From contig NC_043022.1 of assembly GCF_006345805.1 (NCBI RefSeq), positions 20,336,001 through 20,400,000 of the forward strand: DNA of 64,000 bases. Direction: 5' to 3'. A program made the position numbers and the translations under genes. The notes under the pieces are model-generated. The model was not told the origin of the DNA, did not search any database, and was given only the letters and a program-made list of their open reading frames with translations. The DNA comes from Octopus sinensis (Eukaryota). The first letter of the stretch is position 1. The number at the start of each line of letters is the position of its first letter. Positions 571 through 63,222 of the stretch are shown here, piece after piece.

Positions 571-1122
571 GATGGATCTCTGAACCCCCAGAAACAGCTG
601 TTGGACTTACAACACCTTTCTTCGTCCCTTTTAATTTTCTCTGTCACTTAGACTCTGTGTAAGTTGGATCTCTTAGCCCTTTTGTTATCGTATATATTTT
701 GAGATGCTTTGTGTTTCTTTCACTTAATTTCAAATATAACAAAGAATTTAATAAAATAACTTAGTTATCATTAAGTTTGTGTTAGGAACGTAATTTGTGA
801 CTAAGGTTTGGTGGAATATTTTCATTCAGAACATATGAAAATAAGACATTTGTACTAAAGAGCCAGAGGCGGTTTTAGCCGGGTTGGTATTGAAAAGGTT
901 AATATAAATATCTATATATTAATGCTTAAATATTCATCATCTGAAAACCTTCACCTTTTGCATGGATACCTATATACATATTTTGTATTTCATACCAAAG
1001 CTGTTATATTTAATATATTCAATTTGTTTATCTACACAATTTCCAACATACATACCTATATTTATACATATGAATATACATACATACATACATCACACGC
1101 ATACACATATAATATGATGATA

Positions 1123-1524
1123 GGCGCAGGAGTGGCTGTGTGGTAAGTAGCTTGCTTACCAACCACATGGTTCCGGGTTCAGTACCACTGCATGGCACTT
1201 TGGGCAAGTGTCTTCTGCTATAGCTTCGGGCCGACCAAAGCCTTGTGAGTGGATTTGGTAGACGGAAACTGAAAGAAGCCTGTCGCATTATGTATATGTG
1301 TGTGTGTGTGTGTGTCTGTCTGCATTTGTCACCCCGAACATCATTTGACATGCGATGCTGGTGTGTTTACGTCCCCGTAACCCAGCAGTTCGACAAAAAG
1401 TGACTGATAGAATAAGTACTAGGCTTACAAAGAATAAGTTCCGGAGTCGATTTGCTTGACTAAAAAGGTGGCGCTCCAGCATGGCCGCAGTCAAATGACT
1501 GAAACAAGTAAAAGAATAAAAGAA
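1123..1524 (+). mobile_element. tRNA-derived SINE, family 1
   Basis: A box tggctgtgtgg, B box ggttcagt, central (TA/TG)n, tail gctccagcatggccgcagtcaaatgactgaaac. Confidence 0.8.
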
Positions 1525-7124: not shown

Positions 7125-8114
7125 CTACAAAGATACAAAAGAACGACGTGTTTAACTGATAGTATATATGTGTGTGTATGTGTCTGTGTGAGTGTATGTG
7201 TGTATATGTGTGTGTGCATGTATGTGTATGTGGGTGTGTATATATGTGTGTTTATATATATGAGTGTGTTTGTGTATATGTGTGTGTGTATATATATACA
7301 TATATATATACACACACACAATAAAATTGGCTCATTACTTTTGACTGACAGATTTTAAAAAATTATTTTTTGTAACTAAACACTTTCAAACTTCGTATAT
7401 TTGTAGAATGTGTCACATAAAACATCTTTTACTCTTGGTGCTGTTGAGAAAATTCTGTATTTTGGAAGTTATTTCTTGTTAAAGTAGTCGTATTTTGGTA
7501 ATTTCAACCAATTGAAATTAACAATTAATTTTAATTTGATTATTAACAATTTTAAGGAACGCAATTTATCATGTCTTCATAAAATTGGGTATACTTTCTC
7601 CAGATATAAATAGTACTTATTATAAACTACCCTTTAAACTAAATACAACTAGTTATAATGAGCATTTTTACTTTAATATATATAGGAGTAGTAAAATTGT
7701 AATGGGGGGGTTGTGGAGTTTAGTGGGTGCTTTTTACGTGCCACCGGCACAGGTGCCAGATACACATATATATATACAACAGGTTTGTTTCAGTTTCTGT
7801 CTAGCAAATCCACTCATAAGGATTTGGTTGGACTGAGACTATAGTAGAAGACATTTATCCAAAGTGCCAAACATTGGGACTGAACCCAGAACCATGTTGT
7901 TGGGAAGCAAGCTGGTTACCACATAGCCATATATATATTATCATCATACATATACATCCACATATATATACATAGATATATATACATCGATACACATATA
8001 CACATATACACACATACTCACTTTGATATTATGTACATAAATTACATTAGATTAAAAAACAACAGTAAAATATAAAGGAAACATATAAAAAGACAAAAAA
8101 AAGGGTCAGCTAAC

Positions 8115-8895: not shown

Positions 8896-9464
8896 CACGG
8901 TGTCCCAAAAGTCACTGATGGCTTTCACTAAATGCATGAAATTTTGATACAATATAAACGACATAATGGAAATTAAAATGCACAGGTCAAATTTTGAAAC
9001 ACCGCTACATCACATATGAAAAATTACATCGCTTAAAAGGCAGCCATTTTTGACTTTGCATGCCCGTGCTCTTTCCAAAACTTGCTCCATAACAACCTCA
9101 AGAGTTTCAGACCCCGCTTCTCTGATTTCTCTATTGATGTTCTCCTTCAGTTGCACCAGGGTCTGCAGTTTGTTGACATAAACCCTCTCTTTCAAGTATC
9201 CCCACAGAAAAAAATCTGGACTAGTCAAGTCTGGGGAATGTAAAACCCAGTTGACATTGCTGTAGCAGGAGATTATTCTCTCTTCAAAGCATTGCCATAG
9301 CAACTGCATTGTTTCTCTTGCAGTATGAGCAGTTGCCCCATCTTACTAGAACCATGTGTGAGGTCTATTTTGAATGGCCTTTCCATTATGTCCTTTATAT
9401 TTACTTTTAAAATTAAGGAAGTTATTAAAAACTGAAACCCATCAATGACTTTTGGGACACCCAG
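8896..9464 (-). mobile_element. Internally deleted Tc1/mariner element
   Basis: TIRs cacggtgtcccaaaagtca / tgacttttgggacaccc, TA at both ends, HSPDLTSPDFFLWGYLKERVY motif; truncated copy at ~47648-47795 in paralog B. Confidence 0.85.
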
Positions 9465-10886: not shown

Positions 10887-11584
10887 CTGAAAGGAAATTT
10901 GAAAAAGTAAAAGAAAGAAAAAGAAAAAAAAAAGCATTATCGCAAATTAATAATTTCAAATTTTGGCACAAGGCCAGCAATTCTGAGACTTTTTTTTAGG
11001 AGCAAAAGTTATAAATCTTCCACATTATTGTAATTTTAGTAAACCATTACAATATAAGCTGCCCTACCAACTTTTGTGATTCCATATTGAAGGAGATGAT
11101 TATAACAACACTTTGAACACACCCCACAAAATACCAACCCACCAATGTTCAACTGGTACTTATTTTATCGATCCCAAAAGGATAAAAGATAAAGTTGAGC
11201 TTGGTGGAATTTGAACTCAGAATGTAAAGGTAGATAAAATGCTACTAAGTATTCTGTCCGGCATGATGATGATTCCGTCAGCTCATGGCCTACTATCTCA
11301 GATTATTAACAAATATTTTGACAAGCTGATAGAGACCTCCATACAGTGGTTTGAGATCTTGGTCCTTCCATAAACAGCCTTGCCCAGGCTTGTGCCTCGG
11401 AAGGGGTCTTTTTAGGTGCAATCTCATGGTCAATCATGACCTAAGGGGTGGTCCTTACCTTTACCCTACATACATATAATGGTATTAAGAGGGGAGGCTG
11501 GTATGCATGAATAAATATGCAATAAATTTGACAAAGAAATCTGACAGCTAAAGAGTTAATGTTTGAAATAATAAGCTGACTTAC

Positions 11585-13557: not shown

Positions 13558-13608
<51 letters not shown>

Positions 13609-14030
13609 TGCATATATATAAATATATACACGCTCACACATATATATATACATATATATATACACACACACACATTCATACACACATATACACACACATA
13701 CATATATACATACATATACAAACATACACATACAAATATACATACATACGTATATCTATATATATATAAATATATAGGAGTATGTGTGTGTGTATTCATG
13801 TATGTATGTATTCAAATACCAAATCTTGAAGATGGGAAGCAGACTTACTGTAGTATTTTGATGTGTCCAGTTGCATACTCATGTCATTTTGCTTATAGAA
13901 CCTGTAAATTATGATTATTGCACAACCCTTGGCTTCCTGAAACAGCTGTCGAGTTAAGACATTACGTAATTTCCTTAGATTTTATTCTGTTTTTATTGTT
14001 CCATGTGAATACATATACATACATACATAC

Positions 14031-14062
<32 letters not shown>

Positions 14063-14139
14063 CTTTTGTCAAACAAGTAAAATATTTTTTTTTAAAAAGA
14101 GATAAAAGGTAAATGAATTTAAACCAAATGAATTCTTAC

Positions 14140-14192
14140 CCCACAACATCGCCATATTTATTCAACCATTCTGCATCAACCACAAATTTTCC
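14140..14192 (-). CDS. CYP3A-like copy A exon 3 (GKFVVDAEWLNKYGDVVG)
   Basis: 53 bp, KYG motif, AG/GTAAGA sites; same size as human CYP3A4 exon 3. Confidence 0.92.
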
Positions 14193-14401
14193 CTGAAAAA
14201 AAAAACAAAACAGAAAAAGAGAAATGTAATATATATGTGTGTATATGTGTAGTATACGTGTGTAACTATGCCATGGCAAGAATGCATTTGAAAATAGATC
14301 CCAAACACAGAAGACATGAGGCAAAACAAGCAGCAGCAGCAGCAACAACAACAACAACTGTATTGAAAGGCAATATTGACAGGATATGCAAATATACTGA
14401 C

Positions 14402-14498
14402 CTTGCGTTGAATTTCTTTCAAGCTGCCCCAAGGAAAGGAGGGTTTCGGTCCTGGATATCCAAACTGTTTTAGATAGTTATAGGGCCATTTTTTGAAT
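14402..14498 (-). CDS. CYP3A-like copy A exon 2 (FKKWPYNYLKQFGYPGPKPSFPWGSLKEIQRK)
   Basis: Proline-rich PGPKP hinge typical of microsomal P450s; AG/GTCAGT sites; 97 bp. Confidence 0.92.
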
Positions 14499-14929
14499 CT
14501 GGGAAAGAATTGTGATGGAGAGTTTAAAAGGTTAAAAGAAACACTTATTTATTATTGTCTTCTTTAACACAGCAACTTCACAACAGAACGTAACAACCAT
14601 GGGACTGAGGTAACCCTCTCCATTCAGACTTCAAGGACCCTGCAGGGGATTTATTCAATTTCAAGCAACATTGTGATGCTCTCTCTTCACATGTTCCCTT
14701 ATCTTTTTCAATCCTGTTTGTAAGCTTGATCCTTATAGTTCCCAAAGCTCAAACAACAACAGAGACAACATCAACCTTCTTCAATGCCCATAGTCTTTTT
14801 ATCTCTTAATTCAATCCATCTTGTCTAATTTGCTTCTCTTCTTCTCCTGATATACTGCAACAAAATAAGCCAAGGTCGGTTTGGAGGGGTGATGAAGTGG
14901 GGGTGTATAAAAACCAGGTAATCTTTCGT

Positions 14930-14939
14930 GTTTGTTCTT

Positions 14940-14995
<56 letters not shown>

Positions 14996-15011
14996 ATGTC
15001 CATGCTTGTTC

Positions 15012-15063
<52 letters not shown>

Positions 15064-15460
15064 ATGTCCATGCTTGTTCTTCTGTGTGTGTGTTGTGTGT
15101 GTGTGTGTTGTGTGTGTGTGTGTGTTGTGTGTGTGCATGTCCATGCTTGTTCTTCTGTGTGTGTGTGTGTGTGTGTGTGTGTTGTGTGGTGTGTGTGCAT
15201 GTCCATGCTTGTTCTTGTGTGTGTGTGTGTGGTGTGGTGTGTGTGTGCATGTCCATGCTTGTTCTTCTGTTGTGTGTGTGTGTGTGTGTTGTGGTGTGTG
15301 TGTGTGTGTGTGTGTGCATGTCCATGCTTGTTCTTCTCTGTGTGTGTGTGTGTGTGTGTGGTGTGTGTTGTGTGTGTGCATGTCCATGCTTGTTCTTCTG
15401 TGTGGTGTGTGTGTGTGTGTGTTGTGTGTGTGGTGTGTGTGTGCATGTCCATGCTTGTTC

Positions 15461-15510
<50 letters not shown>

Positions 15511-15541
15511 TGCATGTCCATGCTTGTTCTTCTGTGTGTGT

Positions 15542-15576
<35 letters not shown>

Positions 15577-15595
15577 ATGTCCATGCTTGTTCTTC

Positions 15596-15642
<47 letters not shown>

Positions 15643-15667
15643 TGTGTGTGCATGTCCATGCTTGTTC

Positions 15668-15711
<44 letters not shown>

Positions 15712-15727
15712 ATGTCCATGCTTGTTC

Positions 15728-15775
<48 letters not shown>

Positions 15776-16139
15776 ATGTCATGCTTGTTCTTCTGTGTGT
15801 GGTGTGTGTTGTGTGTGTGTGTGGTGTGTTGTGTGTGTGCATGTCCATGCTTGTTCTTCTGTGTGTGTGTGTGTGTTGTGTGTGTGTGTGTGTGTGTGGT
15901 GTGTGTGTGTGCATGTCCATGCTTGTTCTCTGTGTGTGTGTGTTGTGTGTGTGTGGTGTGTGTGTGTGTGTGTGGTGTGTGTGCATGTCCATGCTTGTTC
16001 TTCTGTGTGTGTGTTGTGTGTGTGTGTGTGTGGTGTGTGTGTGTGTGGTGTGTGTGTGCATGTCCATGCTTGTTCTTCTGTGTGTGTGTGTGTGTGTGTG
16101 TGTGGTGGTGTGTGTGTGTGCATGTCCATGCTTGTTCTT

Positions 16140-16187
<48 letters not shown>

Positions 16188-16203
16188 ATGTCCATGCTTG
16201 TTC

Positions 16204-16239
<36 letters not shown>

Positions 16240-16327
16240 ATGTCCATGCTTGTTCTTCTGTGTGTGTGGTGTGTGTGTGTGTGTGTGTGTGGTGTGTGTT
16301 GTGTGTGTGTGCATGTCCATGCTTGTT

Positions 16328-16365
<38 letters not shown>

Positions 16366-16566
16366 TGTGTGTGTGTGGTGTGTGTGTGTGCATGTCCATG
16401 CTTGTTCTTCTGTGTGTGTGCATGCGTGTTTGTTCCTCTGTGTGTATGTACGTGCTTGTTCTTGTTTGTGTGTGTGTGCGTGTGTGTATGCATGTGTGCT
16501 TGTTCTTGAGTGTGTGCATGTGTGCATGCTTGTTCCTCTGTGTGTGTGTGTGTTTGTGCTTGTTCT

Positions 16567-16598
<32 letters not shown>

Positions 16599-16600
16599 AG
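14930..16600. repeat. Compound (GT)n minisatellite with 22 copies of GCATGTCCATGCTTGTTC
   Basis: Copies counted directly between 14994 and 16410; degenerate copies at the right edge. Confidence 0.95.
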
Positions 16601-17615
16601 TGCCTGTTCTGTTTTTATGTGTTGTGGAATGAAGATATAACGAAATTATGCCAACATTGTCGCATTTTAAACTTGAAGGAAAAAAACACACACAACCCAT
16701 TAGCTTTCTCTTCCCATTTCGATACGACAAGTGACAGTTGACATGGCAACACGTACCGAGTTCTATGTTATGATTTTTCGAGTCAAGGCGAAAGATTGCC
16801 AAAAACCATATATTTACAAAAAATTAATTTTTTCTATACAAAACTGCCTCCAGAAAGACTTCTACCCCTCCCACCCCACCCATTTTCTCCCAAATTTGTT
16901 TATTTTGTAAATTTTTTTTCCAAAAATCCCCGATTTCGGATACGGATGTTCTGGAAAATTGCCAAAAATCCCCGTTTTGGATACAGAGGTTCCGGAAAAT
17001 TGCCAAAAATCAGCATTGTGAAATTCCCCCCTCCCTTTCCTCCCAAACTTCTTCAATTTTGACTTTTTTCCCAACACTAACCCTAAAACCCTAACCCTAA
17101 AACTGTAAACGTAAGTACAGAAATGTTTTGAAATTTTTGTCCGAATCATGATGTCCGTATTTTCCCTTATATTTAGAAACAAAAATTCTACCAAAAAAAT
17201 TTTACAAAGAATTTAGGAAATTTTTTTCAGAATCATAATCTCTGTATTTTTTCGCATATTTTGAAGAAAAAAAATTGTGAAAAAAGTTTAAAATGAAGGA
17301 AATGGTGGTGGTGGGGGTGGGGGTGGGTGTAATTCAGAAATGTCGATTTTTGCCAATTTTTTTTGCAGATTCGTATTCCCCGTAGCCGAAAAGGAGGGAT
17401 TGTGTCGAGAAAAAAAAAACGTTTTTTTTAAAGGGTGGTTTTTTTGTGGGGACGGGTGGAAGTCTTGCCCTGCTTCCATCCCCATCACTTCCATAGATTT
17501 GGTGGAAAAAAACAATGGGGAAAATCTACATGGAAACCAAGAAAATCCAATTTATGTGATCGTCCTGATCTGAACCTCTGCCAAGAAGAGAATGAAAAAT
17601 AATCTGTGTACTCAC

Positions 17616-17692
17616 GTATAAACGATCCCTAAAACTACGAGGGATATGAGGATATATATTGAGGATTCAGTGAACGACAGAAGGTCTATCAT
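17616..17692 (-). CDS. CYP3A-like P450 copy A, coding exon 1 (N-terminal membrane anchor MIDLLSFTESSIYILISLVVLGIVY)
   Basis: ATG at 17692, hydrophobic anchor, GTGAGT donor; 77 bp ends in phase 2 and joins exon 2 in frame (AC|A = Thr). Confidence 0.8.
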
Positions 17693-18329
17693 GACGAACT
17701 GGAAGTCTAGGTTTTCGCTTCGAGACAGAAAGAATTACGTTAAATACAGCAACAGCCGAACAGACTTGTCAACGTCTGTGACAAATGAGAATGCTGCTTG
17801 GCCGGTTTGTCTTCGGAAAGATATACAAATACAGAGCAAAAGAAGTGTAAGAGGAGGAGGAGGAACCGAAGATGAAGAGGATGGAGGGAGAAGATGAGGA
17901 GAAGAAGCGGAGGAGGAGGAGTAAGGTGAAAAAGTAGGGAGGGAAGGGAGAGGAAAAGAGAGTAAAGAGAAGCAGTAGAAGAAGGCGAGGACGTGGGAGA
18001 GAAGGAGTAAAGTGAGGAAGAAGAGGGAGAGGGACAGTTAAATGAAGAAGAAGCAGAGAAGGGGAGTAAAGTAAAGAAGAGAAGGGAGAAAGGGACAGTT
18101 AGAGGCAAAATTACAAAAGTAAAAAAAACAAAGGTGGCTTGAAAGTAGCAGTCATGTGTTCTTGTAACGAAAGATCACCAGAATTTATTATATCAAATAA
18201 ACGAAAAATAAAAAACACAGACATTTGAATAAAAAATCATAAAGTAAATTTATTGTCTTTTAATCTGCTAAATCCTATGAAAAAAACAATCTTTCAAAAT
18301 ATGCTATTGCAGTTTCCACTACCTTCAAA

Positions 18330-18860
18330 TACTGCACTCTCTAATGATCCAAAACAGTGCAGTGTTGATATTTTAATGCCATTTCCTTCCTGGTATCTTT
18401 TAGGAACTTTTCTTTGCTTGGCTTGCTCCAAAGGAGAAATATTGAGGTGGTAAATCATTTTTTCTGCTGTATTGAACAGCTCCTGAAATTTTTCTTCACT
18501 GCATAAATTTTTAGCTCCTCCTGCACCAGTTTGACACTATGTAACATGCCACCTAGATTGACGGTGGCACTTTGAAAAGATTTGTTCAATCCTTCAAGGA
18601 GTTGAAGTAGTGGAACTACAACATGCAATCCAAGAACACATTGACCCGTAGAGGGACACGTAAGAATACCATTGGCACTGGAGGCAATGTTGATGCCAAA
18701 CTCATTTGTTGCCTCTTGTAAAGAAATGAGGACATCTGAATAATTTTCAAGAAGGGCTTTGACTTCAGAAAGTTGTGTTAGCCATCAAGTAGGGCACACA
18801 GGTTTTAAGGACTGTGATGACGATACTTCATTTTCTTCATGTTGTGATAAACACGTCCGC
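18330..18860 (-). mobile_element. Degenerate hAT transposase fragment
   Basis: SLKPVCPT*WLTQLSEVKALLENY resembles the hAT LKxLCxTRW motif, with R changed to stop. Confidence 0.65.
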
Positions 18861-20677: not shown

Positions 20678-22281
20678 CACTGTGTAACAAAATTTTTATT
20701 ATTTTTTTTTTTGTCTTTGGTCAGTAAGTGTTATTTCTCATTTGCTTCTATCTAGAAACACTGGTCAACAGCCAATTTTCATCAGGGATATTATATGTTG
20801 GTTTATATGTAGCTTTGTCCGTGGATTTCGAAATTTTAATTGGTTTCCTTTGATCAGGCACAGTTTTTCTGATGAGGTATCGCTACACATAAACGACTTA
20901 TACAGGTAAATTCTGACTTTTGTTTTATAACTATTTGTATTCATTTTGGCCTCATGAAACAATTCATGAAGACACTTGCCAGGAAAAGCTCAAAAGGGTT
21001 TGAATATGTGAAGGCTAAATTTCCAAAAATCACCGAGGTAAAACTGAAGGAGGGAATATTCATAGGTCCACAGATAAAAGAACTCCTGAAGGACAACCAC
21101 TTCCTCACAGCATTGGATGAGATTGAGCTTAAAGCCTGGGAATCCTTCAAAGGGCTCTGTGAAAATTTCCTAGGCAACAAGAGATCTCTAGATTTTAGAA
21201 GTGGAGTGAAATATCTTCTAGAATCCTACGCTGCAATGACCTGCCGGATGTCACTAAAAGTCCATTTCCTTGATTCACATCTGGACTTTTTTGCAGAGAA
21301 TCTTGGAGCAGAGTCTGATGAGCAAGGCGAATGCTTTCATCAAGTTATTGCATCGATGGGACAACGATATCAAGGATTTTGGAATGCAGGAATGTTAGCT
21401 GACTACTGTTGGGTGTTATACAGGGATGAACCTGAGACAAAACACCATAGAAAGTTCAAATCCCCCAAATTTTAAGTTGTTATGCATTTGAGTGTATTCT
21501 AACTTATTTGTACACAATAATTTTAATTTTATACAATAAAAAGTCATGAAATTATCATATTTTGTATTCAATATCTATATCTATAAAACGCAGGACGAGT
21601 GTGTGTGTGTACGTGAATGTACTTTATGCACGTCCACAAATTAGCACGCATATCGCTCAAATTTTAGGAGTACATTGGTCACGACCATGGCTGTGCTTTT
21701 GTCAACTTATTTTTCCCGAGGTACCTCCGGACAGCGGTAATAATAACTTTTCAACCATAACTTTTACCAATTTTCACGTCGGTGACTTCCGTAAGTTTGC
21801 TAACATGAGTTAAGTCCCCTGTCTTATAGATTAATTCACCCTACTACAATACCTCTGGAAAAAAAAATTAGATTTGGACTATCTAAGCAATCTCAGCGTA
21901 GGAAAAGAGAAAGAGCTGAAGAGACTGACTATCAGCAGAACCATTAGTGAAATATTATAAATTTGTAGTCTGAAACCTGCCAATAAGAGCTTGCGGATAT
22001 TCCGCTACAAAACATTCAATAACATCGAAGCAGTAACTTTCGTAAATCTGGATTCAGAAAGACTCTTTCTGAACCCAGTCAACGACGGGTATTTCTGCTA
22101 GTACTTTATATAGACATGCTTTACGTATCCTATAAGTGAAAACAGCAGGTATCATTAAAATGAAAATGTGGCCTGAGAGAGGAAATTGGACTTCAGATTC
22201 GTAATCAGCATCAAAAATTAACCCAGAAAAGTCGTTCAGCAACTCTGATGATTAAAATAAGTTTCATTTTGTTGACCAGTG
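20678..22281 (+). mobile_element. Deleted CMC/Chapaev3-like DNA transposon
   Basis: Imperfect TIRs cactgtgtaacaaaat / attttgttgaccagtg, TAA on both flanks; ORF 20954-21475 with KEGIFIGPQI, HFLDSHLDFF, SDEQGECFHQ and MLADYCW transposase C-terminal motifs; family assignment from recall only. Confidence 0.65.
21572..21805 (+). mobile_element. Possible non-autonomous Helitron nested in the Chapaev3-like element
   Basis: tctatatctataaaa start followed by (GT)n; 3' end degenerate (ctaa rather than ctag). Confidence 0.35.
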
Positions 22282-22571
22282 TAATTGATAACACAAAGAA
22301 CGGAAGTGGAAGGGATATAACTTGGTGTTACACAATAGAATTGGAAATAATCTAAGTCTCCAAAAGCTGTTATCTTTATGGACGGGTTTGTTTTAAACAT
22401 AGAAGATTATGATTCTGCAGAATATTAAAAGGGTGTGTGATTTTATTCTTGCTTTTTTTAGTAACTTTACAGTTTTTACCTTTTTTCGAAAATGTTCAGA
22501 TTTAAATTTCAAATCTCAGAATATTTTTCTTAAAAATATACAAATATGCGTGACTTTTTAAAACATATTTA

Positions 22572-22734
22572 GGCGCAGGAGTGGCTGTTTGGTAAGTAGC
22601 TTGCTAACCAACCACATGGTTCCGGGTTCAGTCCCACTGCGTGGCATCTTGGGCAAATGTCTTCTGCTATAGCCCCGGGCCGACCAATGCCTTGTGAGTG
22701 GATTTGGTAGACGGAAACTGAAAGAAGCCTGTCG

Positions 22735-22772
<38 letters not shown>

Positions 22773-22978
22773 AATATGTTTGTTCCCCTAGCATTGCTTG
22801 ACAACCGATGCTGGTGTGTTTACGTCCCCGTAAATTAGCGGTTCGGCAAAAGAGACCGATAGAATAAGTACTGGGCTTACAAAGAATAAGTCCCGGGGTC
22901 GATTTGCTCGACTAAAGGCGGTGCTCCAGCATGGCCGCAGTCAAATGACTGAAACAAGTAAAAAGAGTAAAAAAAGAG
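22572..22978 (+). mobile_element. tRNA-derived SINE, family 1
   Basis: Full-length copy matching 1123-1524. Confidence 0.8.
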
Positions 22979-25834: not shown

Positions 25835-26225
25835 ATACTAACCATATCAGGCAAATAATTCATACAGGAACTTTATTATTGTCTTTGCAGTTGGTTTATT
25901 GCATCTGCATACCTCTGGCCACTTTGTACCGCTATCAACAATGATTAGATAGTATGCACCTTTCACCGGTCCAGCATAGTTGATATGTACCTTGGACCAC
26001 GGACTATCCATCTCAGGCCACGGTTAGTATTTCACTGGTGGTGCTTTGGCTGCTAGCGCACAACCTCTACATGATTTTACACAATTTTCAATGTCCCTGT
26101 CTATTGTTGGCCAATATACATAGCTCCTCATTAAGGCTTTCATTCTCAACATTCCCAAGTATCCACTGTGGAATTCCTGCAATACTTGTTTCTGTAGTGC
26201 AGTTGGTACTGCCACACTTTGGGCG
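25835..26225 (-). mobile_element. Gypsy-type LTR retrotransposon integrase fragment
   Basis: HSGYLGMLRMKALMRSYVYWP..CRGC zinc finger followed by PWSKVHINYAGP / IVDSGTKWPE core; stops present. Confidence 0.8.
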
Positions 26226-27235
26226 TACATTAAAACATTCGAATTTGTATTTCTATTTTGCTTATTTTGCAACATTTTTCACAACTTTTTGTGCCTTATG
26301 ATTTAACACACTCACAATAAAATTTCCACTTATTTCTTATTTTTATTTTCCTATAAGAAATAAGTGGAATTTTTACCGGTGAATGTGTTAAATTATAAGG
26401 CACAAAAAGAAAATGACTCTCCCAAGACACAACAGAATATATATATATATATATATATATACATATGAAGGGCTTTTTTCAATTTCTTTCTACCAAATCC
26501 ATCCACCCGCAGCAGTAGTAGAAGACCCTTGGCCAAAATATTATGCTATAGGACTGAACCCAAATCCATGTGGTTGGGAAGCAATATCCTTAAACATACA
26601 GCCATGCCTGTTCTTAAAAAAACAACAACAGCAACAAAAAACAAAAAAGTTGAATACAATAAAATATATAAATCTGTTTATTTCAGAAATTATTTTATTT
26701 CTGGAAAACAAGAAATCACAGAAATGACTTTTGCTTCCAGTGTTAATATTCACAACATTCATTTATATTACATATTATATCTGTTTTATATTAGGGTTAT
26801 ACAATTTATAATTTTGTAATTTAGTGTTTTCTGATATAAGGCACAAGATTACTGGAGGAAAGAAAAAGCTAGTCTGATTTTATTGATATGTTATATCTTT
26901 TAACCCTGGGTGAATAAAAAAGAAATTTGCCCTCAGTGAAATTTGAACACTGAATGTGAAATAAGATATTTAAATTTCCACAAGTTATTTTATCCCCTGA
27001 TGAACTACCAATTTGGCCATGCCAGCACCTTAATTCCTTTGTTGCCAACCCACTAGAGACTATCCCTACTCCTAGGATACAAATTCCGTTTTGAAGTTAT
27101 CTAAATTAAAACCTTCCTATAAAATTCCAAAGTTATTTCAATAAATTTTTTATTGTTTTCAAAATTAATTGAAATAAAGTCAGCGCACTCTAACAGAAAT
27201 TTGGTAACAAAAAGTTAATAATAATAATAATAATA

Positions 27236-31930: not shown

Positions 31931-34900
31931 ATCATCATCATCATCATCATCATTTAGCGTCCGTTTTCCATGCTAGCATGGGTTGGACGGTTCAACTGGG
32001 GTCTGGGGAGCCCGAAGGCTGCACCAGGCCAGTCAGATCTGGCAGTGTTTCTACAGCTGGATGCCCTTCCTAACGCCAACCACTCCGAGAGTGTAGTGGG
32101 TGATTTTATGTGCCACCGACACAGGTGCCAGACGAGGCTGGCGAACGGCCACGCTCGGATGGTGTTTTTATGTGCCACCGACACAGGTGCCAGACGAGGC
32201 TGGCAGACGGCCACGCTCGGATGGTGTTTTTATGTGCCACCGACACAGGTGCCAGATGAGGCTGGCGGACGGCCACGATCGGATGGTGTTGTTACGTCCC
32301 CAAAGCACGGAGGCCAGTCTATGCGGTACTGGCTACGGCCACGTTCGGATGATTTTCTTGTGTGCCACCGCACTGGTACCACAAAGATACAAATTCCATT
32401 GATGTTCATCTATTTTGATTTGTTTTGATTTGATTTTCATTTGCCTCAACAGGTCTTCACAAGTGTCACAAGAAGGAAGGTATGCACAGGTGGACTGACT
32501 ACGTCGCAGGTAGGGGCCACGGGTTATGGCTGACTAGTCTTGCCGGGTCTTCGGATGGTGTTTTTATGTGCCACCGACACAGGTGCCAGATGAGGCTGGC
32601 GAACGGCCACGATCGGATGGTGTTTGTTACGTGCCCAAGCACGGAGGCCAGTCGATGCGGTACTGGCTACGGCCATGTTCGGATGGTTTTCTTGTGTGCC
32701 ACCGGCACTGGTACCACAAATACAAATTCCATTGATGTTCATCTATTTTGTTGATTTGATTGTGATTTGATTTTCACTTGCCTCAACAGGTCTTCACAAG
32801 TGTCACAGGAAGGAAGGAAGGTATGCACAGGTGGACTGACTACGCCCAAGTAGGGGCACGGGTTATGGCCTGACTAGTCTTGCCGGGTCTTCGGTTGGGT
32901 TTTTATGTGCCACCGACACAGGTGCCAGATGAGGCTGGCGAACGGCCACGATCGGATGGTGTTTGTTATGTGCCCACGTCACAGAGGCAGTCGATGCGGT
33001 ACTGGCTACGGCCACGTCGGATGGTTTACTTGTGTGCCAACGGTACTGGTACCACAAAGATACAAATTCCATTGATGTTCATCTATTTTGATTTGGTTTG
33101 ATTTGATTTGATTTGATTTTCACTTGCCTCAACAGGTCTACACAAGTGTCACACCACTTGCCTCAACAGGTCTTCACAAGTGTCATAAGTAGGTGTCACA
33201 CACTTGCCTCAACAGGTCTTCACAAGTGCATAAGTAGGAAGGTATGCACAGGTGGACTGACTACGTCGCCGGGTCTTCGGATGGTTGTTTTTATGTGTGC
33301 GGTACTGGCTACGGCCACGTTCGGATGGTTTTCTTGTGTGCCAACGGTACTGGTACCACAAAGATACAAATTCCATTGATGTCATCTATTTTGATTTGGT
33401 TTGATTTGATTTGATTTGATTTTCACTTGCCTCAACAGGTCTACACAAGTGTCACACACTTGCCTCAACAGGTCTTCACAAGTGTCATAAGTAGGTGTCA
33501 CACACTTGCCTCAACAGGTCTTCACAAGTGTCATAAGTAGGAGGTATGCACAGGTGGACTGACTACGTCGCCGGGTCTTCGGATGGTGTTTTTATGTGCC
33601 ACCGACACAGGTGCCAGATGAGGCTGGCGAACGGCCACGATCAGATGGTGTGTTTGTTGTGCCTACAGCACGGAGGAGCCAGTCGATGCGGTACTGGCTA
33701 CGGCCACGTTCGGATGGTTTTCTTGTGTGCCACCGGTACTGGAACCACAAAGATACAAATCCATTGATGTTCATCTATTTTGATTTGGTTTGATTTTCAC
33801 TTGCCTCACAGGTCTTCACAAGTGTCACACACTTGCCTCAACAGGTCTCCACAAGTGTCACACACTTGCCTCTGCCTCAACAGGTCTTCACAAGTGTCAC
33901 ACACTTGCCTCAACAGGTCTTCACAAGTGTCATAAGAGGGGAGGTATGCACAGGTGGACTGACTACGTCGCTGGGTCTTCGGATGGTGTCTTTATGTGCC
34001 ACCGACACAGGTGCCAGATGAGGCTGGCGAACGGCCACGATCGGATGGTGTTTGTTGTGCCCACAGCACGGAGGCAGTCGATGCGGTACTGGCTACGGCC
34101 ACGTTTGGGTGGTTTTTTTGTGTGCACCGGCACTGGTACCACAAAGAATACAATTCCACTGATGTTCATCTATTTTGATTTGTTTTGATTTGATTTTCAC
34201 TTGCCTCAACAGGTCTTCATAAGTGTCACAAGAAGGAAGGTATGCACAGGAGGACTGACTATGTCCCAGGTAGGGGCCACGGGTTATGGCCTGACTGTCT
34301 TGCCGGGTCTTCTCACGCACAGCATACTTCCATAGGTCTCGGTCTCTAGACATTTTCTTAGTGAGACCTAAAGTTCGAAGGTCGTGCTTCACCACCTTGT
34401 CCCAGGTTTTCCTGGTCTACTTTCCACAGGTTCCCTCACTGCTAGGGTGTAGCACTTTTGCACACAACTATCTTCAGCCATTCTCCATCACATGACCATA
34501 CCAGCGCAAACGTCTCTCTTGCACACCACAACTGACGCTTCTTAGGTTCAATTTTCTCTCAAGGAACTTACACTCTGACGGTTATGAACACTGACATTAC
34601 ACATCCATCGGCGCATACTGGCTTCATTTCTTGCGAGCTTACGCATATCCTCAGCAGTCACGGCCCATGTTTCACTACCATGTAGCATGGCTGTACGTAC
34701 ACATGCATCATACAGTCTGCCTTTTACTCTGAGCGAGAGGCCTTTTGTCACCAGCAGGGGTAAGAGCTCTCTAAACTTTGCCCAGGCTATTCTTACTCTA
34801 GCAGTTACACTTTCAGCACACCCACCCCCGCTACTGACTTGGTCTCCTAGGTAGCGGAAGCTATCAACTACTTCTAGTTTGTCTCCCTGGAACGTGTGGC

Positions 34901-42773: not shown

Positions 42774-42810
<37 letters not shown>

Positions 42811-42976
42811 CACACACACACATAGATACATATATATATATACACACACACACACATAGATACATATAATATATATACACACACACACATAGATACATAC
42901 ATATATATACACACCACACACATAGATACATACATATATATATATATAATACACACACACACATAGATACTACATA

Positions 42977-43013
<37 letters not shown>

Positions 43014-43065
43014 TAGATACATACATATATATATTATATATATATATATATACACACACACATAG

Positions 43066-43111
<46 letters not shown>

Positions 43112-43271
43112 CACACACACAAATAGATACATACATATATATAGATATATATATATATAATATACACACACACACATAGATACATATATATATATCTATA
43201 TATACTAATACAATTGTTCGTTTGTTTTCCACCTGCCTTCGTCTTTTGTTTATTTTCATAAAGCTTCCCGT

Positions 43272-45259: not shown

Positions 45260-46988
45260 TATATATATATATATATTGATCCATTCTTGTTGCTTTTTTC
45301 CTATTTGTAATCACCCCACTTGTCGTATGGTTAACACCATATAGATTTCCGGTGCATCCAAGTTAAGTACTATATTCATGTGAATTCATTAGAACTCACT
45401 TGAATCTCAATTGCTTAAACCGTATATATATATATATACACACATTTATATACATATATATATATACACATTTATATACATATATATATATACATATTTA
45501 TATACATATAAATGTGTATATATATATATATATCATCATCATCATTTAGCGTCCGTTTTCCATGCTAGCATGGGTTGGACGGGTCAACTGGGGTCTGTGA
45601 AGCTGGAAGGCTTCGTCAGGCCCAGTCAGATCTGGCAGTGTTTCTACGGCTGGATGCCCTTCCTAACGCCAACCACTCCGCGAGTGTAGTGGGTGTTTTT
45701 TACGTGCCACCTGCACAGGTGTCAGACAGAGCTGGCAAACATATATATATATATATATATATACATACATATACACACATATATATATATATACACACAC
45801 ACACATATATACAACAGGCTTCTTTCAGTTTCTGTCTACCGAATCCACTCACAAGGATTATGTCAGACTGAGACTATAGTAGAAGACATTTACCCAAAGT
45901 GGCAAACACTGGGACTGAACCCAGAACCATGTTGTTGGGAAGCAAGCTGGTTACCACACAGCCATATATATATTATCATCATCATACGTATACAACCACA
46001 TATATATGCATAGATATATATACATCCATAAACATACACACATACTCACTTTTATATTATATATATAAACTAACAGCAAAGCCTGGTTTCACCCGGTCTG
46101 TTTGGATGATGTGGCTGTGATTGTTTTCAGTTAGGCATAATCTATAACACCGTTTCTCGACCTTATCATTTTGGGTCCCCTGTTTTGACTGGAGCCTCCA
46201 GATGTATGAAAATTTCCTGACTCCCTGCTCCCTGTCAGAAAACAGCTTCAGGATTTGTGAAGAATGAATTTGTTATGTAATCTGTTTCTGAGAACTATTC
46301 TATTGGGCCTCTGTCTAATCATTAAAACATTGATTTAATTATGAACATAGAAAAGGTCATGTTATAAATTTTTTAGGATTGTTGATTTACGGAAAAAATT
46401 ATGTTAAATTTTTGAAATGCAAATATGTGAATGAAAATTAAGTTCAGACCTCTACATGGTAGTTAGACCTGGTAGAAATAGCTGCCAAATCCCTCTCAAA
46501 ACACCCTACTGTCTTAATCCAACAATTCTGCCTACTATGTAGTTCGCCTGAGAAACTGTAACTAAAGATTAAGATTATTAACCTTACAAAGAAGTGAAAG
46601 AAGAGAGACAGCATAGAGAAAGTTTTGGCTGACTGTCATCCTGTACTCCCCTTGTTGCTAGCGAAATGGTATATGCTGGCTGTGTGAGCAACTGGTTGTT
46701 TTAATGGTGAAACAAACAGGGAAATTCCATTAGAAAAAGTTTTAATCGGTTTTCTCGGTAAGTATGGGGGCTAGGAAAAAAATACAAACCGCATTCCAAT
46801 CTATGCACCCATCCCCACATGTGTGCCATTTTTCACACGAATCCACCCAGCCGTTTGGCTGTGAACCTCAAGACAAGAAAGAATACAACGATCGCCCATG
46901 TTCAATTTATATTATAGATTACATTGGATTAAAAAACAACTGTAAAATATAAAGGAAACGTAAAAAGACAAACAAAGGGTCAACTAAC

Positions 46989-50434: not shown

Positions 50435-51944
50435 ATATATATACAAACAAACACATACAAATATACATACATATATCTATATATATATAAATATATAGGT
50501 GTATGTGTGTGTGTATTCATGTATGTATGTATGTATTCAAATACCAAATCTTTCCTTGAAGACAGGAAGCAGACTTACTGTGGTATTTTGATGTGTCCTG
50601 TTGCATACTCATGTCATTTTGCTTATAGCACCTGTAAATTATGATTATTGCACAACTCTTGGCTTCCTGAAACAGCTGTCAAGTTAAGAGATTACATAAT
50701 TTCTTTAGATTTTATTGTTTTTGTTGTGTTCCATGTGAATATATATATATATATAAGTCAAACCTAACTGCATTTATCTGTATGCATGTGTGTATGTATG
50801 TGTGTTTATGCTTGTGTATTCTTGCCTTGACATCATGCGATGGTTGTAAACAAGTGCCCCTGTCATACAAGCAGTGTCATTGATTTCCAGTATTCTGTGA
50901 GAACATGTCTGGACTTGGATCAATATTTCCTGACTTGGAAGCAGGTGAGGTTTATTGACAGGAAGAGCATCTAGCTGCAGAAAATCTACCTCAGTAAACT
51001 CCATACGACAAATGCAAGCATGAAAAAGGGGACTTTAAAACGATGATGATGATGATGACAATGATGATACCTATTTCTTTACTACCCACAAGGGGCTAAA
51101 CAGAGAGAGGACAAACAAGGACAGGCAAACGGATTCAGTCGATTACATTGACTCCAGTGCGTAACTGGTACTTAATTCATCAACCCCGAAAGGATGAAAG
51201 GCAAAGTCGACCTCTGCGGAATTTGAACTCAGAACGTAATGGCAGATGAAATACGACTACGCATTTCGTCCAGCGTGCTAACGATTCTGCCAGCTCACCG
51301 CAATGATGATGATACCATCACCCCTTCTGCCCCACATACATACACTGTGGAGAATTTACACACACACATCTGTGTGCGTGTGCATGTGATTGAGTTTATT
51401 ATTCCTCTTTCACTTCAGTAAACATAAAAGAACTTCTCCAACCAACAGATATGTTATCTGGTTTTAAGTAAACAAAATGTGACCCATTTAGTCTATTCAC
51501 AGCTATTTGCTTTGTATACTTTACTCTTTGTCCATATATTTCTGCACAATCACCATCAGCAACATTAATATCAGCATCATCATCATCATCATGTTGTTTT
51601 GTCTGCTTTCCAGTGCAGTTCAGAGGAGAATTATATTGAGCCATTTAGATTTTAACACAATAAATATCAGACGTCATAAACACCACATTGAATCAGGAAT
51701 ACAAAAACCAGCTCTGTGGTGAGACACAACCTTTGTGAAACTAGTCCAGTAATAAGTCAAGGACCATGTTTTAGTACAATCCAAGTAATCCTGTGACTAA
51801 TTATACTACATCACTAATTAATTATTATACACTGTTTTAAACTCTAGTACTCATCTTCACAATATCATTTGTCAATGCTAACAAGATAGAATATTTTACT
51901 AATGTTGCAGAGAAGAAGAGCACTGCTAGAAGAGCAGGTAGAGA

Positions 51945-55320: not shown

Positions 55321-55758
55321 CTAGGAAAGAATTGTGATAGAGAGTTTAAAAGGTTAAAAGAAACACATTGCTTAATATAAGAGGCACACACACACACACA
55401 TATTTATTATTGTCTTCTTTAACACAGCAACTTCACAACAGGACGTAACAACCATGGGACTGGGATAACCCTCTTCATTCAGACTTCAAGGACCCTGCAG
55501 GGGATTTATTCAATTTCAAGCAACATTGTGTTCTATAGATGCTCTCTCTTCACATGTTCCATTATCTTTTTCAGTCCTATTTGTAAGCTTGGTCCTTATA
55601 ATTCCCAAAGCTCAAACAACAACAACAGAGACAACACCAACCCTTTTCAATGCCCATAGTCTTTTTATCTCTTAATTCAATCCATCCTGTCTAATTTGCT
55701 TCTCTTCTTCTTCTCCTGATATACTGCCATCATCAGGACATACACCATCTTTGATTAA

Positions 55759-55951
55759 CCCTTTGGCATTTGGACCAGTTTTGCCCAACTGAAATTATTC
55801 TAACTTGTTTCATGTTCAAACTGGCCAAATCTGGTTTCTCACAACAACCACATCATTGAAATCTTGAAGCTTTGACATAATGCTGGATTAATTCAAAACA
55901 ATGTAAATAAATACGCATTACATTTGACAGAAGAATCTGAATGCTAAAGGG
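55759..55951. mobile_element. Non-autonomous piggyBac MITE
   Basis: TTAA|ccctttggcatt ... aatgctaaaggg|TTGA; right end resembles that of the 38075-40677 element. Confidence 0.7.
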
Positions 55952-55971
55952 TTGACTCCTTGCAGAAAGGA

Positions 55972-56140
55972 AGCAGGAGTGGCTGTGTGGTAAGTAGCTT
56001 GCTAACCAACCACATGGTTCCGGGTTCAGTCCCACTGCGTGGCATCTTGGGCAAGTGTCTTCTGCTATAGCCCCGGGCCGACCAATGCCTTGTGAGTGGA
56101 TTTGGTAGACGGAAACTGAAAGAAGCCCGTCGTATATATG

Positions 56141-56175
<35 letters not shown>

Positions 56176-56386
56176 TTGCGTGTCTGTGTTTGTCCCCCTA
56201 GCATTGCTTGACAACCGATGCTGGTGTGTTTACGTCCCCGTCACTTAGCGGTTCGCCAAAAAGAGACCGATAGAATAAGTACTGGGCTTACAAATAATAA
56301 GTCCCGGGGTCGATTTGCTCGACTAAAGGCGGTGCTCCAGCATGGCCGCAGTCAAATGACTGAAACAAGTAAAAGGGTAAAGAGAG
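55972..56386 (+). mobile_element. tRNA-derived SINE, family 1
   Basis: Full-length copy. Confidence 0.8.
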
Positions 56387-57709: not shown

Positions 57710-58128
57710 GGCGCAGGAGTGGCTGTGTGGTAAGTAGCTTGCTAACCAACTACATGGTTCCGGGTTCAGTCCCACTGCGTGGCATCTTGGGCAAGTGTCT
57801 TCTGCTATAGCCCCAGGCCAACCAATGCCTTGTGAGTGGATTTGGTAGACGGAAACTGAAAGAAGCCTGTCGTATATATGTATATATATGTATATGTATG
57901 TGTGTGTTTGTGTGTCTGTGTTTGTCCCCCTAGCATTGCTTGACAACCGATGCTGGTGTGTTTACGTCCCCCGTCACTTAGCGGTTCAGCAAAAGAGACC
58001 GATAGAATAAGTACTGGGCTTACAAAGGATAAGTCCCGGGGTCGATTTGCTCGACTAAAGGCGGTGCTCCAGCATGGCCGCAGTCAAAGTGACTGAAACA
58101 AGTAAAAGAGTAAAAAGAGTAAAAGAGA
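57710..58128 (+). mobile_element. tRNA-derived SINE, family 1
   Basis: Full-length copy. Confidence 0.8.
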
Positions 58129-58408
58129 GTTAAGCACAGGCTAGCATCTGTAACCCAATAGCATCTAGACCACTCTGTCGAATGTAATGCATATTTATTC
58201 ACATTGTTTTGAATTAATCATGCATTATATAAGTAACTATGAGATTTCAATGATGTAGCAGTTTATCATTAAAATGACATTATAGGGCAGGCGTGAGAGG
58301 TCTGATCTGGTCACTTTGAACGTAAAACAAGTAAAATGCTTTGAGATGGATATGGCTGGGTTCACCTTTTAGCATTCTGATTATTCTGTCAAATGTAATA
58401 TTCATCAT

Positions 58409-60678: not shown

Positions 60679-60721
<43 letters not shown>

Positions 60722-60726
60722 GTGTG

Positions 60727-60757
<31 letters not shown>

Positions 60758-63171: not shown

Positions 63172-63222
<51 letters not shown>

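What the first reader, a model, noticed from the sequence alone, without database searches (positions are those of the whole stretch)
14990..16410. 22-copy intron-1 array whose constant unit is a near-consensus p53-family response element
The invariant motif between variable (GT)n spacers reads GTGCATGTCC-ATGCTTGTTC. That is two adjacent RRRCWWGYYY half-sites with zero spacer, both CWWG cores intact, and one mismatch each (18/20). It also contains the dyad GCATG-tc-CATGC. The array is in intron 1 of a detoxification P450, about 1.2 kb from exon 1, and was not found at the corresponding position of copy B (homology stops at 14857/55727). Established: full-site, zero-spacer elements bind p53/p63/p73 best and are often intronic. 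Inference: a minisatellite expansion may have created a stress-responsive homotypic enhancer specific to copy A. The (GT)n spacers are also Z-DNA-prone.
Basis: partly seen in the sequence, partly recalled or inferred. Interest (0 to 1): 0.7.

Follow-up and report, generated by a model that had tools for sequence, protein, structure and literature searches.

The report
Young minisatellite in octopus CYP3A intron
A 1.7-kb tandem array in the first intron of one of two duplicated octopus CYP3A-like detoxification genes grew from a five-unit AC microsatellite that the sister gene copy still carries; its repeat unit resembles a middle-strength p53 binding site, but nothing found here shows that it works as one.

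Summary
There are 21 exact copies and one 1-bp-deleted copy of GTGCATGTCCATGCTTGTTC at 14992-16407, separated by variable (GT)n. Each matches the p53 consensus at 18/20 with zero spacer and intact cores.

The window is Octopus sinensis chromosome DNA. It carries two tandem CYP3A-like genes on the minus strand. The array lies in intron 1 of copy A, 1.2 kb from exon 1 (17692-17616).

Copy B has the empty site, but outside the window, about 0.7 kb downstream of its own exon 1. There both array flanks are contiguous around ...GAACAG(AC)5AGAAGAACAAACACGAAA.... So the array grew in place from a microsatellite plus its flank. Six degenerate older units sit at one edge. The 22 main units show no substitutions among themselves.

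The p53-like 20-mer exists only in the young unit. The proto-unit and the edge units have broken cores. Published transactivation rules grade the unit 2-3 out of 5. Sites of this quality occur about once per 60 kb in octopus DNA.

In O. vulgaris, which split 2.5 My ago, a 3-kb deletion removes the whole region.

Verdict: an ordinary lineage-specific minisatellite. The enhancer idea is untested and has no positive support beyond the motif match.

The parts
14947..16411 (+). Homogenised core of the array. It holds 22 units of (GT)n + GCATGTCCATGCTTGTTCTTCT as read on the + strand. In the pre-mRNA sense the unit is AGAAGAACAAGCAUGGACAUGC(AC)n.
   Evidence: There are 21 exact 20-mers plus one with a 1-bp deletion at 15774. 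The constant parts show no substitutions among units, only small indels in the TTCT tail.
16412..16612 (+). Six older, degenerate units on the exon-1 side. They have short (GT)n spacers. Their shared old core is GTGCTTGTTCTT.
   Evidence: Direct reading. All score 16/20 or less against the p53 consensus, with broken cores.
14927..14946 (+). Terminal ancestral unit, TTTCGTGTTTGTTCTTCTCT. In gene sense it reads AGAGAAGAACAAACACGAAA.
   Evidence: It aligns to AGAAGAACAAACACGAAA at the empty site of copy B.
14852..14926 (-). Unique flank on the exon-2 side of the array. It is shared with copy B.
   Evidence: Window 14974-14852 matches L003 10751-10873 at 87.2%.
16613..16848 (-). Unique flank on the exon-1 side of the array. 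It is shared with copy B and with O. bimaculoides.
   Evidence: Window 16848-16595 matches L003 10515-10782 at 86.6%. Window 16851-16676 and 16644-16604 match L002.
17616..17692 (-). Exon 1 of CYP3A-like copy A. It encodes MIDLLSFTESSIYILISLVVLGIVY plus 2 nt, with donor TAC|GTGAGT.
   Evidence: The peptide is 22/25 identical to the N-termini of P0001 and P0002.
14402..14498 (-). Exon 2 of copy A. It encodes FKKWPYNYLKQFGYPGPKPSFPWGSLKEIQRK. The acceptor follows a phase-2 intron.
14499..17615 (-). Intron 1 of copy A, 3,117 bp. The array (14927-16612) makes up 54% of it.
   Evidence: Gene model. Homology to annotated copy B and O. bimaculoides proteins.
14857..14858 (.). The junction where copy A lacks about 10.5 kb of intron 1 that copy B has (L003 10873-21339, equivalent to window 66193-55727).
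   Evidence: O. bimaculoides shares the copy-B structure on the exon-2 side.

Best explanation
The feature is a young, lineage-specific compound minisatellite. It grew in place from a short (AC)n microsatellite and its immediate flank, in intron 1 of the downstream copy (A) of a tandemly duplicated CYP3A-like gene of Octopus sinensis.

Shown:
- The paralogue keeps the unexpanded site GAACAG(AC)5AGAAGAACAAACACGAAA.
- In copy A the same two flanks are 1.7 kb apart. Between them lie six diverged short-spacer units, then 22 sequence-identical units, then one terminal unit that still has the ancestral sequence.

Inferred:
- Slipped-strand mispairing and unequal exchange between neighbouring (AC)n tracts duplicated the segment '(AC)n + flank'.
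- One variant unit acquired GCATGGACATGC. It then spread or was homogenised recently, while slippage lengthened the (AC)n tracts.
- The resemblance of that derived unit to a p53-family response element is most likely a by-product of this history, not the reason for it.
- The array has no selected regulatory role. Any effect on copy A would be a side effect of 22 long (GT/AC) tracts in intron 1.
For: - Array anatomy.
- Empty site in copy B, with both flanks contiguous: and the alignment.
- The unit is absent from the rest of the window, from the 58.7-kb copy-B locus, from the O. vulgaris locus and from the assembled part of the O. bimaculoides locus.
- The flanks are single-copy sequence, not a transposon.
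- The flanks differ by about 13% between copies A and B, yet the 22 constant parts show no substitution. So the homogenised core is much younger than the duplication.
- The p53-like 20-mer is confined to the young unit.
- The unit grades 2-3 of 5 by published rules.
- Background is 3 sites of 18/20 or better in 183 kb of octopus DNA, and shuffles expect 1.6 per 64 kb.
- The O. vulgaris orthologue has a 188-bp intron 1, and the whole region is deleted.
- The window holds several other compound dinucleotide-derived arrays (7167-7297, 13576-13755, 42780-43204).
- No Rfam family matches in or near the array.
Against: - For one pre-specified motif the match is not trivial. Only 1-2 of 20,000 shuffled or random anchors placed in (GT)n flanks reached 18/20. 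The GT-rich context does not explain it.
- Twenty-one zero-spacer sites in 1.4 kb would give high avidity if an octopus p53/p63/p73 protein binds them.
- Human CYP3A genes are reported to have p53 response elements (PMC6581675).
- A p53-bound microsatellite is known (PIG3; PMC5622345).
- Absence of conservation does not exclude a species-specific gain.
- No expression, chromatin or population data were available.
Confidence: 0.72

Rival explanations
1. The expansion created a cluster of 21-22 p53/p63/p73 response elements. This cluster makes copy A, and not copy B, inducible by DNA damage or stress.
For: - The unit matches 18/20, with zero spacer and both CWWG cores intact.
- Nominal chance per random unit is about 1e-4.
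- The unit would grade 2-3 of 5, the range of many human target sites.
- The array is specific to copy A.
- Molluscs, including squids, have p53/p63/p73 genes with all four domains (PMC5543598).
- Precedents exist: the PIG3 repeat and p53 elements reported in CYP3A promoters.
Against: - It is a single mutational event amplified, and the motif was picked after the fact.
- One mismatch lies in an internal quarter-site, and the second core is CTTG.
- The proto-unit and older units are not p53-like.
- No other site of this quality lies near either promoter.
- The region is deleted in O. vulgaris, while exons 1 and 2 stay intact.
- The RefSeq model of copy A starts only at exon 5 (P0003). So transcript support for the 5' exons is not evident.
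- There are no binding or expression data.
Confidence: 0.08
2. The array acts through its dinucleotide tracts rather than through p53. As DNA, 22 long (GT/AC) tracts are Z-DNA-prone and disfavour nucleosomes, which could modulate transcription through intron 1. As RNA, 22 (AC)n tracts plus 22 GCAUG pentamers could bind hnRNP L-like and RBFOX-like proteins and alter intron 1 splicing.
For: - The gene is on the minus strand, so the pre-mRNA carries (AC)n and AAGCAUGG.
- The array ends 450 nt upstream of the exon 2 acceptor.
- Precedents exist: the EGFR intron 1 CA repeat, the eNOS intron 13 CA repeat with hnRNP L, and Z-DNA-forming AC repeats (PMC5622345).
Against: - The evidence is analogy only.
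- The site in copy B has only (AC)5.
- O. vulgaris does without the region.
- The GCAUG is preceded by A, not by the preferred U (direct reading; the RBFOX preference is from memory).
- There are no splicing data.
Confidence: 0.12
3. The array, or its size and internal detail, is an artefact of a noisy long-read assembly.
For: - The O. sinensis assembly is PacBio plus Hi-C (citation).
- All variation among constant parts is by indel.
- The spacers hold 36 phase-breaking GG/TT interruptions against 1 substitution.
Against: - The flanks and the terminal unit have clear homologues in copy B.
- Spacer lengths differ from unit to unit, which a collapse or duplication artefact would not produce.
- Neighbouring units share the same order of interruptions, for example 15911 and 15983 with TT-GG-GG.
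- The rate of phase breaks is the same outside the array and in the O. vulgaris assembly, 3.6-3.8 per 100 nt.
Confidence: 0.04

Closest known systems
Minisatellites (VNTRs) born from a microsatellite plus flank, by slippage and unequal exchange
   Same: - Head-to-tail units of 50-79 bp.
- A dinucleotide tract inside each unit.
- Degenerate edge units around a homogenised core.
- An unexpanded seed, (AC)5, at the homologous site of the paralogue.
   Different: Nothing essential differs. Copy-number polymorphism, the usual hallmark, could not be checked.
PIG3 (TP53I3) (TGYCC)n microsatellite bound by p53 (Contente et al. 2002, as reviewed in PMC5622345)
   Same: A tandem repeat inside the gene whose units resemble p53 sites. 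Its copy number could scale the response.
   Different: - PIG3 is a 5-bp repeat of quarter-site-like units, and it has been shown experimentally to bind p53.
- Here each unit is a full 20-bp site separated by (GT)n, and there is no experimental evidence.
Canonical p53 response elements of target genes, including those reported in human CYP3A promoters (Goldstein et al. 2013, cited in PMC6581675)
   Same: Two RRRCWWGYYY decamers with zero spacer, beside a CYP3A-family gene.
   Different: - There are two non-core mismatches in different halves and one CTTG core, giving grade 2-3 of 5.
- The element is intronic, 21-fold repeated, and not conserved in the paralogue or the sister species.
Functional intronic CA/GT repeats (EGFR intron 1; eNOS intron 13 with hnRNP L)
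   Same: Long CA/GT tracts in an intron near the 5' end of a gene.
   Different: Those are single pure microsatellites with measured effects. This is a compound array with no functional data.

Membership tests
p53-family response element | Two decamers RRRCWWGYYY, with few mismatches and intact CWWG cores | tested here: met
   The match is 18/20, with mismatches at positions 2 and 12. The cores are CATG and CTTG.
p53-family response element | Spacer of 0-2 bp between the half-sites | tested here: met
   The spacer is zero.
p53-family response element | High predicted transactivation potential by rules derived from experiment | tested here: inconclusive
   The p53retriever class is 'DD, different half', with 0 spacer. 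This gives grade 3 with 'AT' and grade 2 without, on a 1-5 scale. Only one core is CATG. These are human p53 rules.
p53-family response element | Occurs more often than chance allows, once the amplification is discounted | tested here: inconclusive
   It is one independent event. The nominal chance is about 1e-4 per random unit. But background sites occur about once per 60 kb, and the motif was chosen after the fact.
p53-family response element | Conserved in orthologues or paralogues | tested here: not met
   Copy B has only a non-p53-like proto-unit. The region is deleted in O. vulgaris. O. bimaculoides is uninformative because of an assembly gap.
p53-family response element | Bound by a p53/p63/p73 protein, and confers p53-dependent induction | not testable with these tools
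   This needs EMSA, ChIP, reporter and expression experiments.
Microsatellite-derived minisatellite (VNTR) | Tandem head-to-tail units of about 10-100 bp | tested here: met
   There are 22 main units and 7 degenerate or ancestral ones, with a period of 50-79 bp.
Microsatellite-derived minisatellite (VNTR) | A homologous empty site that carries the seed sequence | tested here: met
   Copy B at L003 10760-10800 reads GAACAG(AC)5AGAAGAACAAACACGAAA, with both flanks contiguous.
Microsatellite-derived minisatellite (VNTR) | Copy-number polymorphism among individuals | not testable with these tools
   Only one O. sinensis assembly is available.
Transposon-borne or dispersed satellite | The unit or its flanks are repeated at other loci, or terminal repeats or target-site duplications are present | tested here: not met
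   There are no other copies in the window or in about 183 kb of further octopus sequence. The flanks match only the homologous sites. A scan of metagenome contigs found nothing. The whole genome could not be scanned.
CYP3 clan cytochrome P450 (host gene) | Sequence similarity to CYP3A and the CYP3A-type positions of the first introns | tested here: met
   PDB best hits are CYP3A7/3A4/3A5, E 4e-81 to 2e-72. RefSeq names are 'cytochrome P450 3A14(-like)'. The match of exon 1-4 boundaries and of the phase-2 intron 1 to the human CYP3A4 layout rests on the model compared with my memory of CYP3A4.
Known structured RNA family | A match to an Rfam covariance model | tested here: not met
   Nothing matched in 14000-18500 apart from two sub-threshold miRNA-like hits in an AT repeat at 14003-14063.

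The most novel reading that the evidence does not exclude
A five-unit AC microsatellite in one paralogue of an octopus CYP3A-like gene expanded within the last few million years into a cluster of 21 full, zero-spacer p53-family sites. This gave that paralogue alone a new DNA-damage-inducible enhancer. It would be a directly traceable case of a regulatory element born from a microsatellite, with the empty site preserved in the sister copy and a natural deletion in the sister species.
Probability: 0.07. Interest if true: 0.6.

Novelty: new member of a known kind. Interest (0 to 1): 0.22.

Why it matters
As it stands, this is an ordinary lineage-specific minisatellite, of the kind that is plentiful in the repeat-rich octopus genome.

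Its modest value is as a clean worked example. The seed, the older degenerate units, the homogenised core and the empty paralogous site are all visible in one locus.

If the p53 reading were true, it would show how repeat expansion can wire a duplicated detoxification gene into a stress pathway. Copy B and the O. vulgaris deletion would serve as natural controls. That would interest people who study how regulation evolves and people who study p53 networks outside vertebrates.

Tried and rejected
- A protein search with only exons 2-5 (119 aa) found nothing. The full 455-aa spliced model was needed to identify the species and the paralogues.
- An exact look-up of a 173-aa ORF to identify the genome failed. 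A paper search for the SINE sequence also failed.
- A metagenome scan for the 22-nt unit gave 0 hits. This is uninformative for an octopus.
- I expected the GT-rich context to inflate chance matches to the p53 consensus. Shuffles and a TG-rich Markov model showed that it does not, so I dropped that argument.
- I first suspected that the imperfect TG tract at 56983-57104 in copy B was the array's counterpart (74% over 50 nt, E 0.009). The true counterpart turned out to be L003 10760-10800, outside the window.
- Assembly error as the source of the GG/TT interruptions is inconclusive. The rate inside the array equals that elsewhere and in another species' assembly.
- A hairpin or cruciform role for the GCATG-TC-CATGC dyad was not pursued. 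It has 5-bp arms and a 2-nt loop, and its axis does not coincide with either p53 half-site.
- Transposon origin was rejected, because the flanks are single-copy.
- A known RNA family was rejected.

Full report
**1. What is in the sequence**

Reading 14700-16700 shows a long GT-rich block. TRF reports it only as a period-2 array at 14943-16602. Within it, the 20-mer GTGCATGTCCATGCTTGTTC occurs 21 times without a mismatch, from 14992 to 16407. It occurs nowhere else in the 64 kb.

A 22nd unit at 15774 lacks one C. The full constant part is GCATGTCCATGCTTGTTCTTCT. Units differ only by small indels in the TTCT tail, never by a substitution.

The spacers are (GT)n of 32-61 nt, counting the TTCT tail, so the period is 50-79 bp. 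The spacers carry 36 single-base phase breaks (GG or TT) and one substitution.

- six diverged units with short spacers at 16412-16612;
- one terminal unit at 14927-14946.

The old core shared by these units is GTGCTTGTTCTT.

**2. The p53 match**

The consensus RRRCWWGYYYRRRCWWGYYY with up to two mismatches hits all 21 exact units. The mismatches are at positions 2 and 12, and the cores CATG and CTTG are intact.

Two other sites of the same quality lie elsewhere in the window, at 11376 and 50901. Dinucleotide-preserving shuffles expect 1.6 per 64 kb.

I expected the GT context to favour the match, but it does not. Only 1-2 of 20,000 shuffled or random anchors embedded in (GT)n reached 18/20. 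A TG-rich Markov sequence gave one hit in 2 Mb. So for one pre-specified motif and one unit the nominal chance is about 1e-4. However, the motif was chosen after seeing the unit, among about a hundred tandem arrays in this window alone. The 21 matches are also one event amplified.

By the published transactivation rules of p53retriever (PMC4470028, Additional file 1), mismatches at R2 and R5 are class 'DD, different half'. With zero spacer this gives grade 3 if the 'AT' core bonus applies and grade 2 if not, on a scale of 1 to 5. Only one of the two cores is CATG. That is a middle-strength site, not a near-optimal one. The authors describe grade 2 sites as poorly responsive on their own.

**3. 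The gene and the species**

The P450 exons are on the minus strand. A splice-aware reconstruction gives 12 exons in the window, all of them open. The best solved relatives are human CYP3A7, CYP3A4 and CYP3A5, with E 4e-81 to 2e-72.

A search with the 455-aa model identified the source as Octopus sinensis:
- P0003, 'cytochrome P450 3A14-like [Octopus sinensis]', is 100% identical over 74% of the query. This is copy A.
- P0001, 'cytochrome P450 3A14', is 86% identical and lies on the same 25.5-Mb chromosome record. This is copy B.
- Orthologues exist in O. vulgaris, O. bimaculoides and Argonauta.

The ab initio exon 1 candidate is at 17692-17616. It encodes MIDLLSFTESSIYILISLVVLGIVY, with donor GTGAGT and a phase-2 intron. 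It is 22/25 identical to the annotated N-termini of copy B and of the O. bimaculoides protein. So the array is indeed in intron 1 (3,117 bp), 1.2 kb from exon 1 and 450 bp from exon 2. It makes up 54% of the intron.

The heme-binding exon of copy A lies beyond the window start, but it is present in P0003.

**4. Where the array came from**

The unit is absent, allowing up to 3 mismatches, from three fetched loci:
- the 58.7-kb O. sinensis copy-B locus (L003);
- the O. vulgaris locus (L001);
- the assembled part of the O. bimaculoides locus (L002).

As a control, the fetched copy-A locus (L004) shows all 22.

The decisive result is a BLAST of intron 1 of copy A against L003. The exon-1-side flank (window 16848-16595) aligns to L003 10515-10782 at 86.6%. 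The exon-2-side flank (window 14974-14852) aligns to L003 10751-10873 at 87.2%. The two flanks are therefore contiguous in copy B.

The sequence there reads ...aaaaacagaacag ACACACACAC agaagaacaaacacgaaa tattgtctg.... This is an empty site with (AC)5 and a single proto-unit. It lies about 0.7 kb downstream of B's exon 1, at a position equivalent to window coordinate about 66,290, outside the window.

In copy A, in gene sense, the same flanks enclose:
- GAACAG-GCACTC(AC)n;
- five more degenerate units;
- the 22 identical units AGAAGAACAAGCATGGACATGC(AC)n;
- the terminal AGAGAAGAACAAACACGAAA, which still has the ancestral sequence.

This is the expected footprint of a minisatellite born from a microsatellite plus its flank by slippage and unequal exchange. 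That mechanism is my inference. The anatomy is shown.

The flanks differ by about 13% between the copies, yet the 22 constant parts (about 480 nt) carry no substitution. So the homogenised core is far younger than the duplication.

The proto-unit and all six edge units score at most 16/20 with broken cores. The p53-like 20-mer is thus a late, derived feature of the unit that happened to spread.

**5. Why homology 'stops' at 14857/55727**

Copy B has 10,466 bp (L003 10873-21339) between the array-flank homologue and the sequence that matches window 14858 downward. O. bimaculoides shares B's structure on the exon-2 side. So copy A lost this segment, or B and the ancestor gained it earlier.

But position 55727 is not its counterpart.

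**6. Related species**

In O. vulgaris, which diverged about 2.5 My ago (bioRxiv 10.1101/2023.05.16.540928), the flanks are 98-99% identical. However, the alignment jumps from window 17539 to 14567. Intron 1 of the orthologue is only 188 bp, with exons 1 and 2 intact. The entire array region is missing there.

This does not date the array. It does show that the region is dispensable for the exon structure and is not conserved.

In O. bimaculoides, homology runs up to ...gaacag. Then come a SINE and an 18.5-kb run of N, which is uninformative.

**7. Function**

Nothing positive supports an enhancer beyond the motif match. The points that keep the idea alive are:
- The nominal rarity of the match.
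- The avidity that 21 sites would give.
- p53/p63/p73 genes with all domains exist in molluscs, including squids (PMC5543598).
- A p53-bound microsatellite exists in PIG3 (PMC5622345).
- p53 response elements are reported in human CYP3A promoters (PMC6581675).

The points against it are:
- the site is middle-grade;
- its ancestry is not p53-like;
- there is no other site near either promoter;
- the region is lost in the sister species;
- the RefSeq model of copy A begins only at exon 5, so use of exon 1 is not documented.

A second possibility is an effect through the dinucleotide tracts themselves. Because the gene is on the minus strand, the pre-mRNA carries 22 (AC)n tracts and 22 GCAUG pentamers. 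CA repeats in introns are known hnRNP L targets, and GT/AC tracts are Z-DNA-prone. This rests on analogy only.

No Rfam family matches the region.

An assembly artefact is unlikely:
- the flanks and the terminal unit have homologues;
- spacer lengths differ from unit to unit;
- some neighbouring units share the same order of interruptions;
- phase breaks are as frequent elsewhere and in the O. vulgaris assembly.

**8. Verdict**

The feature is best described as a young minisatellite, specific to copy A, that expanded in place from an (AC)5 seed. It is a new member of a well-known kind.

I put the p53-enhancer reading at under 10%. It needs binding, reporter and expression tests. Copy B and the O. 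vulgaris deletion provide convenient natural controls.

Noticed in passing
window 10853 downward; L004 10001-21949; exons 1-4 at 17692-11585: The RefSeq protein for copy A (P0003, 414 aa) starts at MILNAKNEEW in exon 5. Yet intact homologues of exons 1-4 are present upstream with good splice sites. The annotation looks truncated at the 5' end, or the 5' exons lack transcript support.
   Followed up: partly
L001 15895-16082 (O. vulgaris OX597839.1): The O. vulgaris copy-A orthologue has a 188-bp intron 1, because about 3 kb (window 17539-14567) is missing. Its annotated protein (P0004) uses a different first exon (MYKKKFKGI) and skips exons 6-8.
   Followed up: partly
window 1120-1521, 22560-22973, 55973-56388, 57694-58123, 61108-61492, 62943-63400: There are at least six copies of a SINE-like element of about 400 bp, 76-94% identical to one another. 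Further copies occur in the O. bimaculoides and O. vulgaris loci. ARAGORN calls no tRNA in them.
   Followed up: partly
window 55757-55962: A short element of about 200 bp with inverted ends (AACCCTTTGGCATT ... AATGCTAAAGGGTT) sits just beyond the A/B homology break in copy B. It looks like a MITE.
   Followed up: no
window 58407-58881: A very regular 32-bp tandem array (14.9 copies, 97% matches; ATTGTTTTGAATTAATGATATTAATTGAATTA) lies in intron 1 of copy B.
   Followed up: no
window 32099-34230: A nested higher-order tandem repeat with periods of 62, 302, 334 and 400 bp (89-97% matches) lies inside copy B.
   Followed up: no
window 16851-17479, including 16920-17011 and 17073-17103: A stretch of about 630 bp in copy A's intron 1 has no counterpart in O. 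bimaculoides. It contains a 41-bp tandem repeat and a short telomere-like (CCCTAA) run.
   Followed up: no
window 26027-26275 (-), 25850-26011 (-): This is a retroelement remnant in the B-A intergenic region. The ORF matches the Pfam integrase zinc-binding domain (PF17921, E 1e-15).
   Followed up: partly
window 20954-21475 (+) and 9013-9342 (-): Two ORFs, of 173 aa and 110 aa, have no Pfam match. They look like transposase remnants to me, from memory only. Window 20315-18623 is also duplicated in inverted orientation in O. vulgaris (L001 25782-24090).
   Followed up: partly
window 11376-11395 and 50901-50920; L002 39629: These are three isolated 18-19/20 matches to the p53 consensus with intact cores, in introns of copy A, copy B and the O. 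bimaculoides gene. They serve as the background rate.
   Followed up: yes
window 7167-7297, 13576-13755, 42780-43204, 45423-45533, 60691-60774: There are several other compound arrays built from (TA)n/(CA)n tracts plus a short anchor, with periods of 26-53 bp. This shows that microsatellite-derived minisatellites are common in this region.
   Followed up: no
proteins P0001, P0002, and copy A completed with the C-terminus of P0003: Copy A is the faster-evolving paralogue. Identities are A-B 86.7%, B-O. bimaculoides 87.1% and A-O. bimaculoides 82.2%. Only one gene of this type was seen in the 74.7-kb O. bimaculoides locus.
   Followed up: partly
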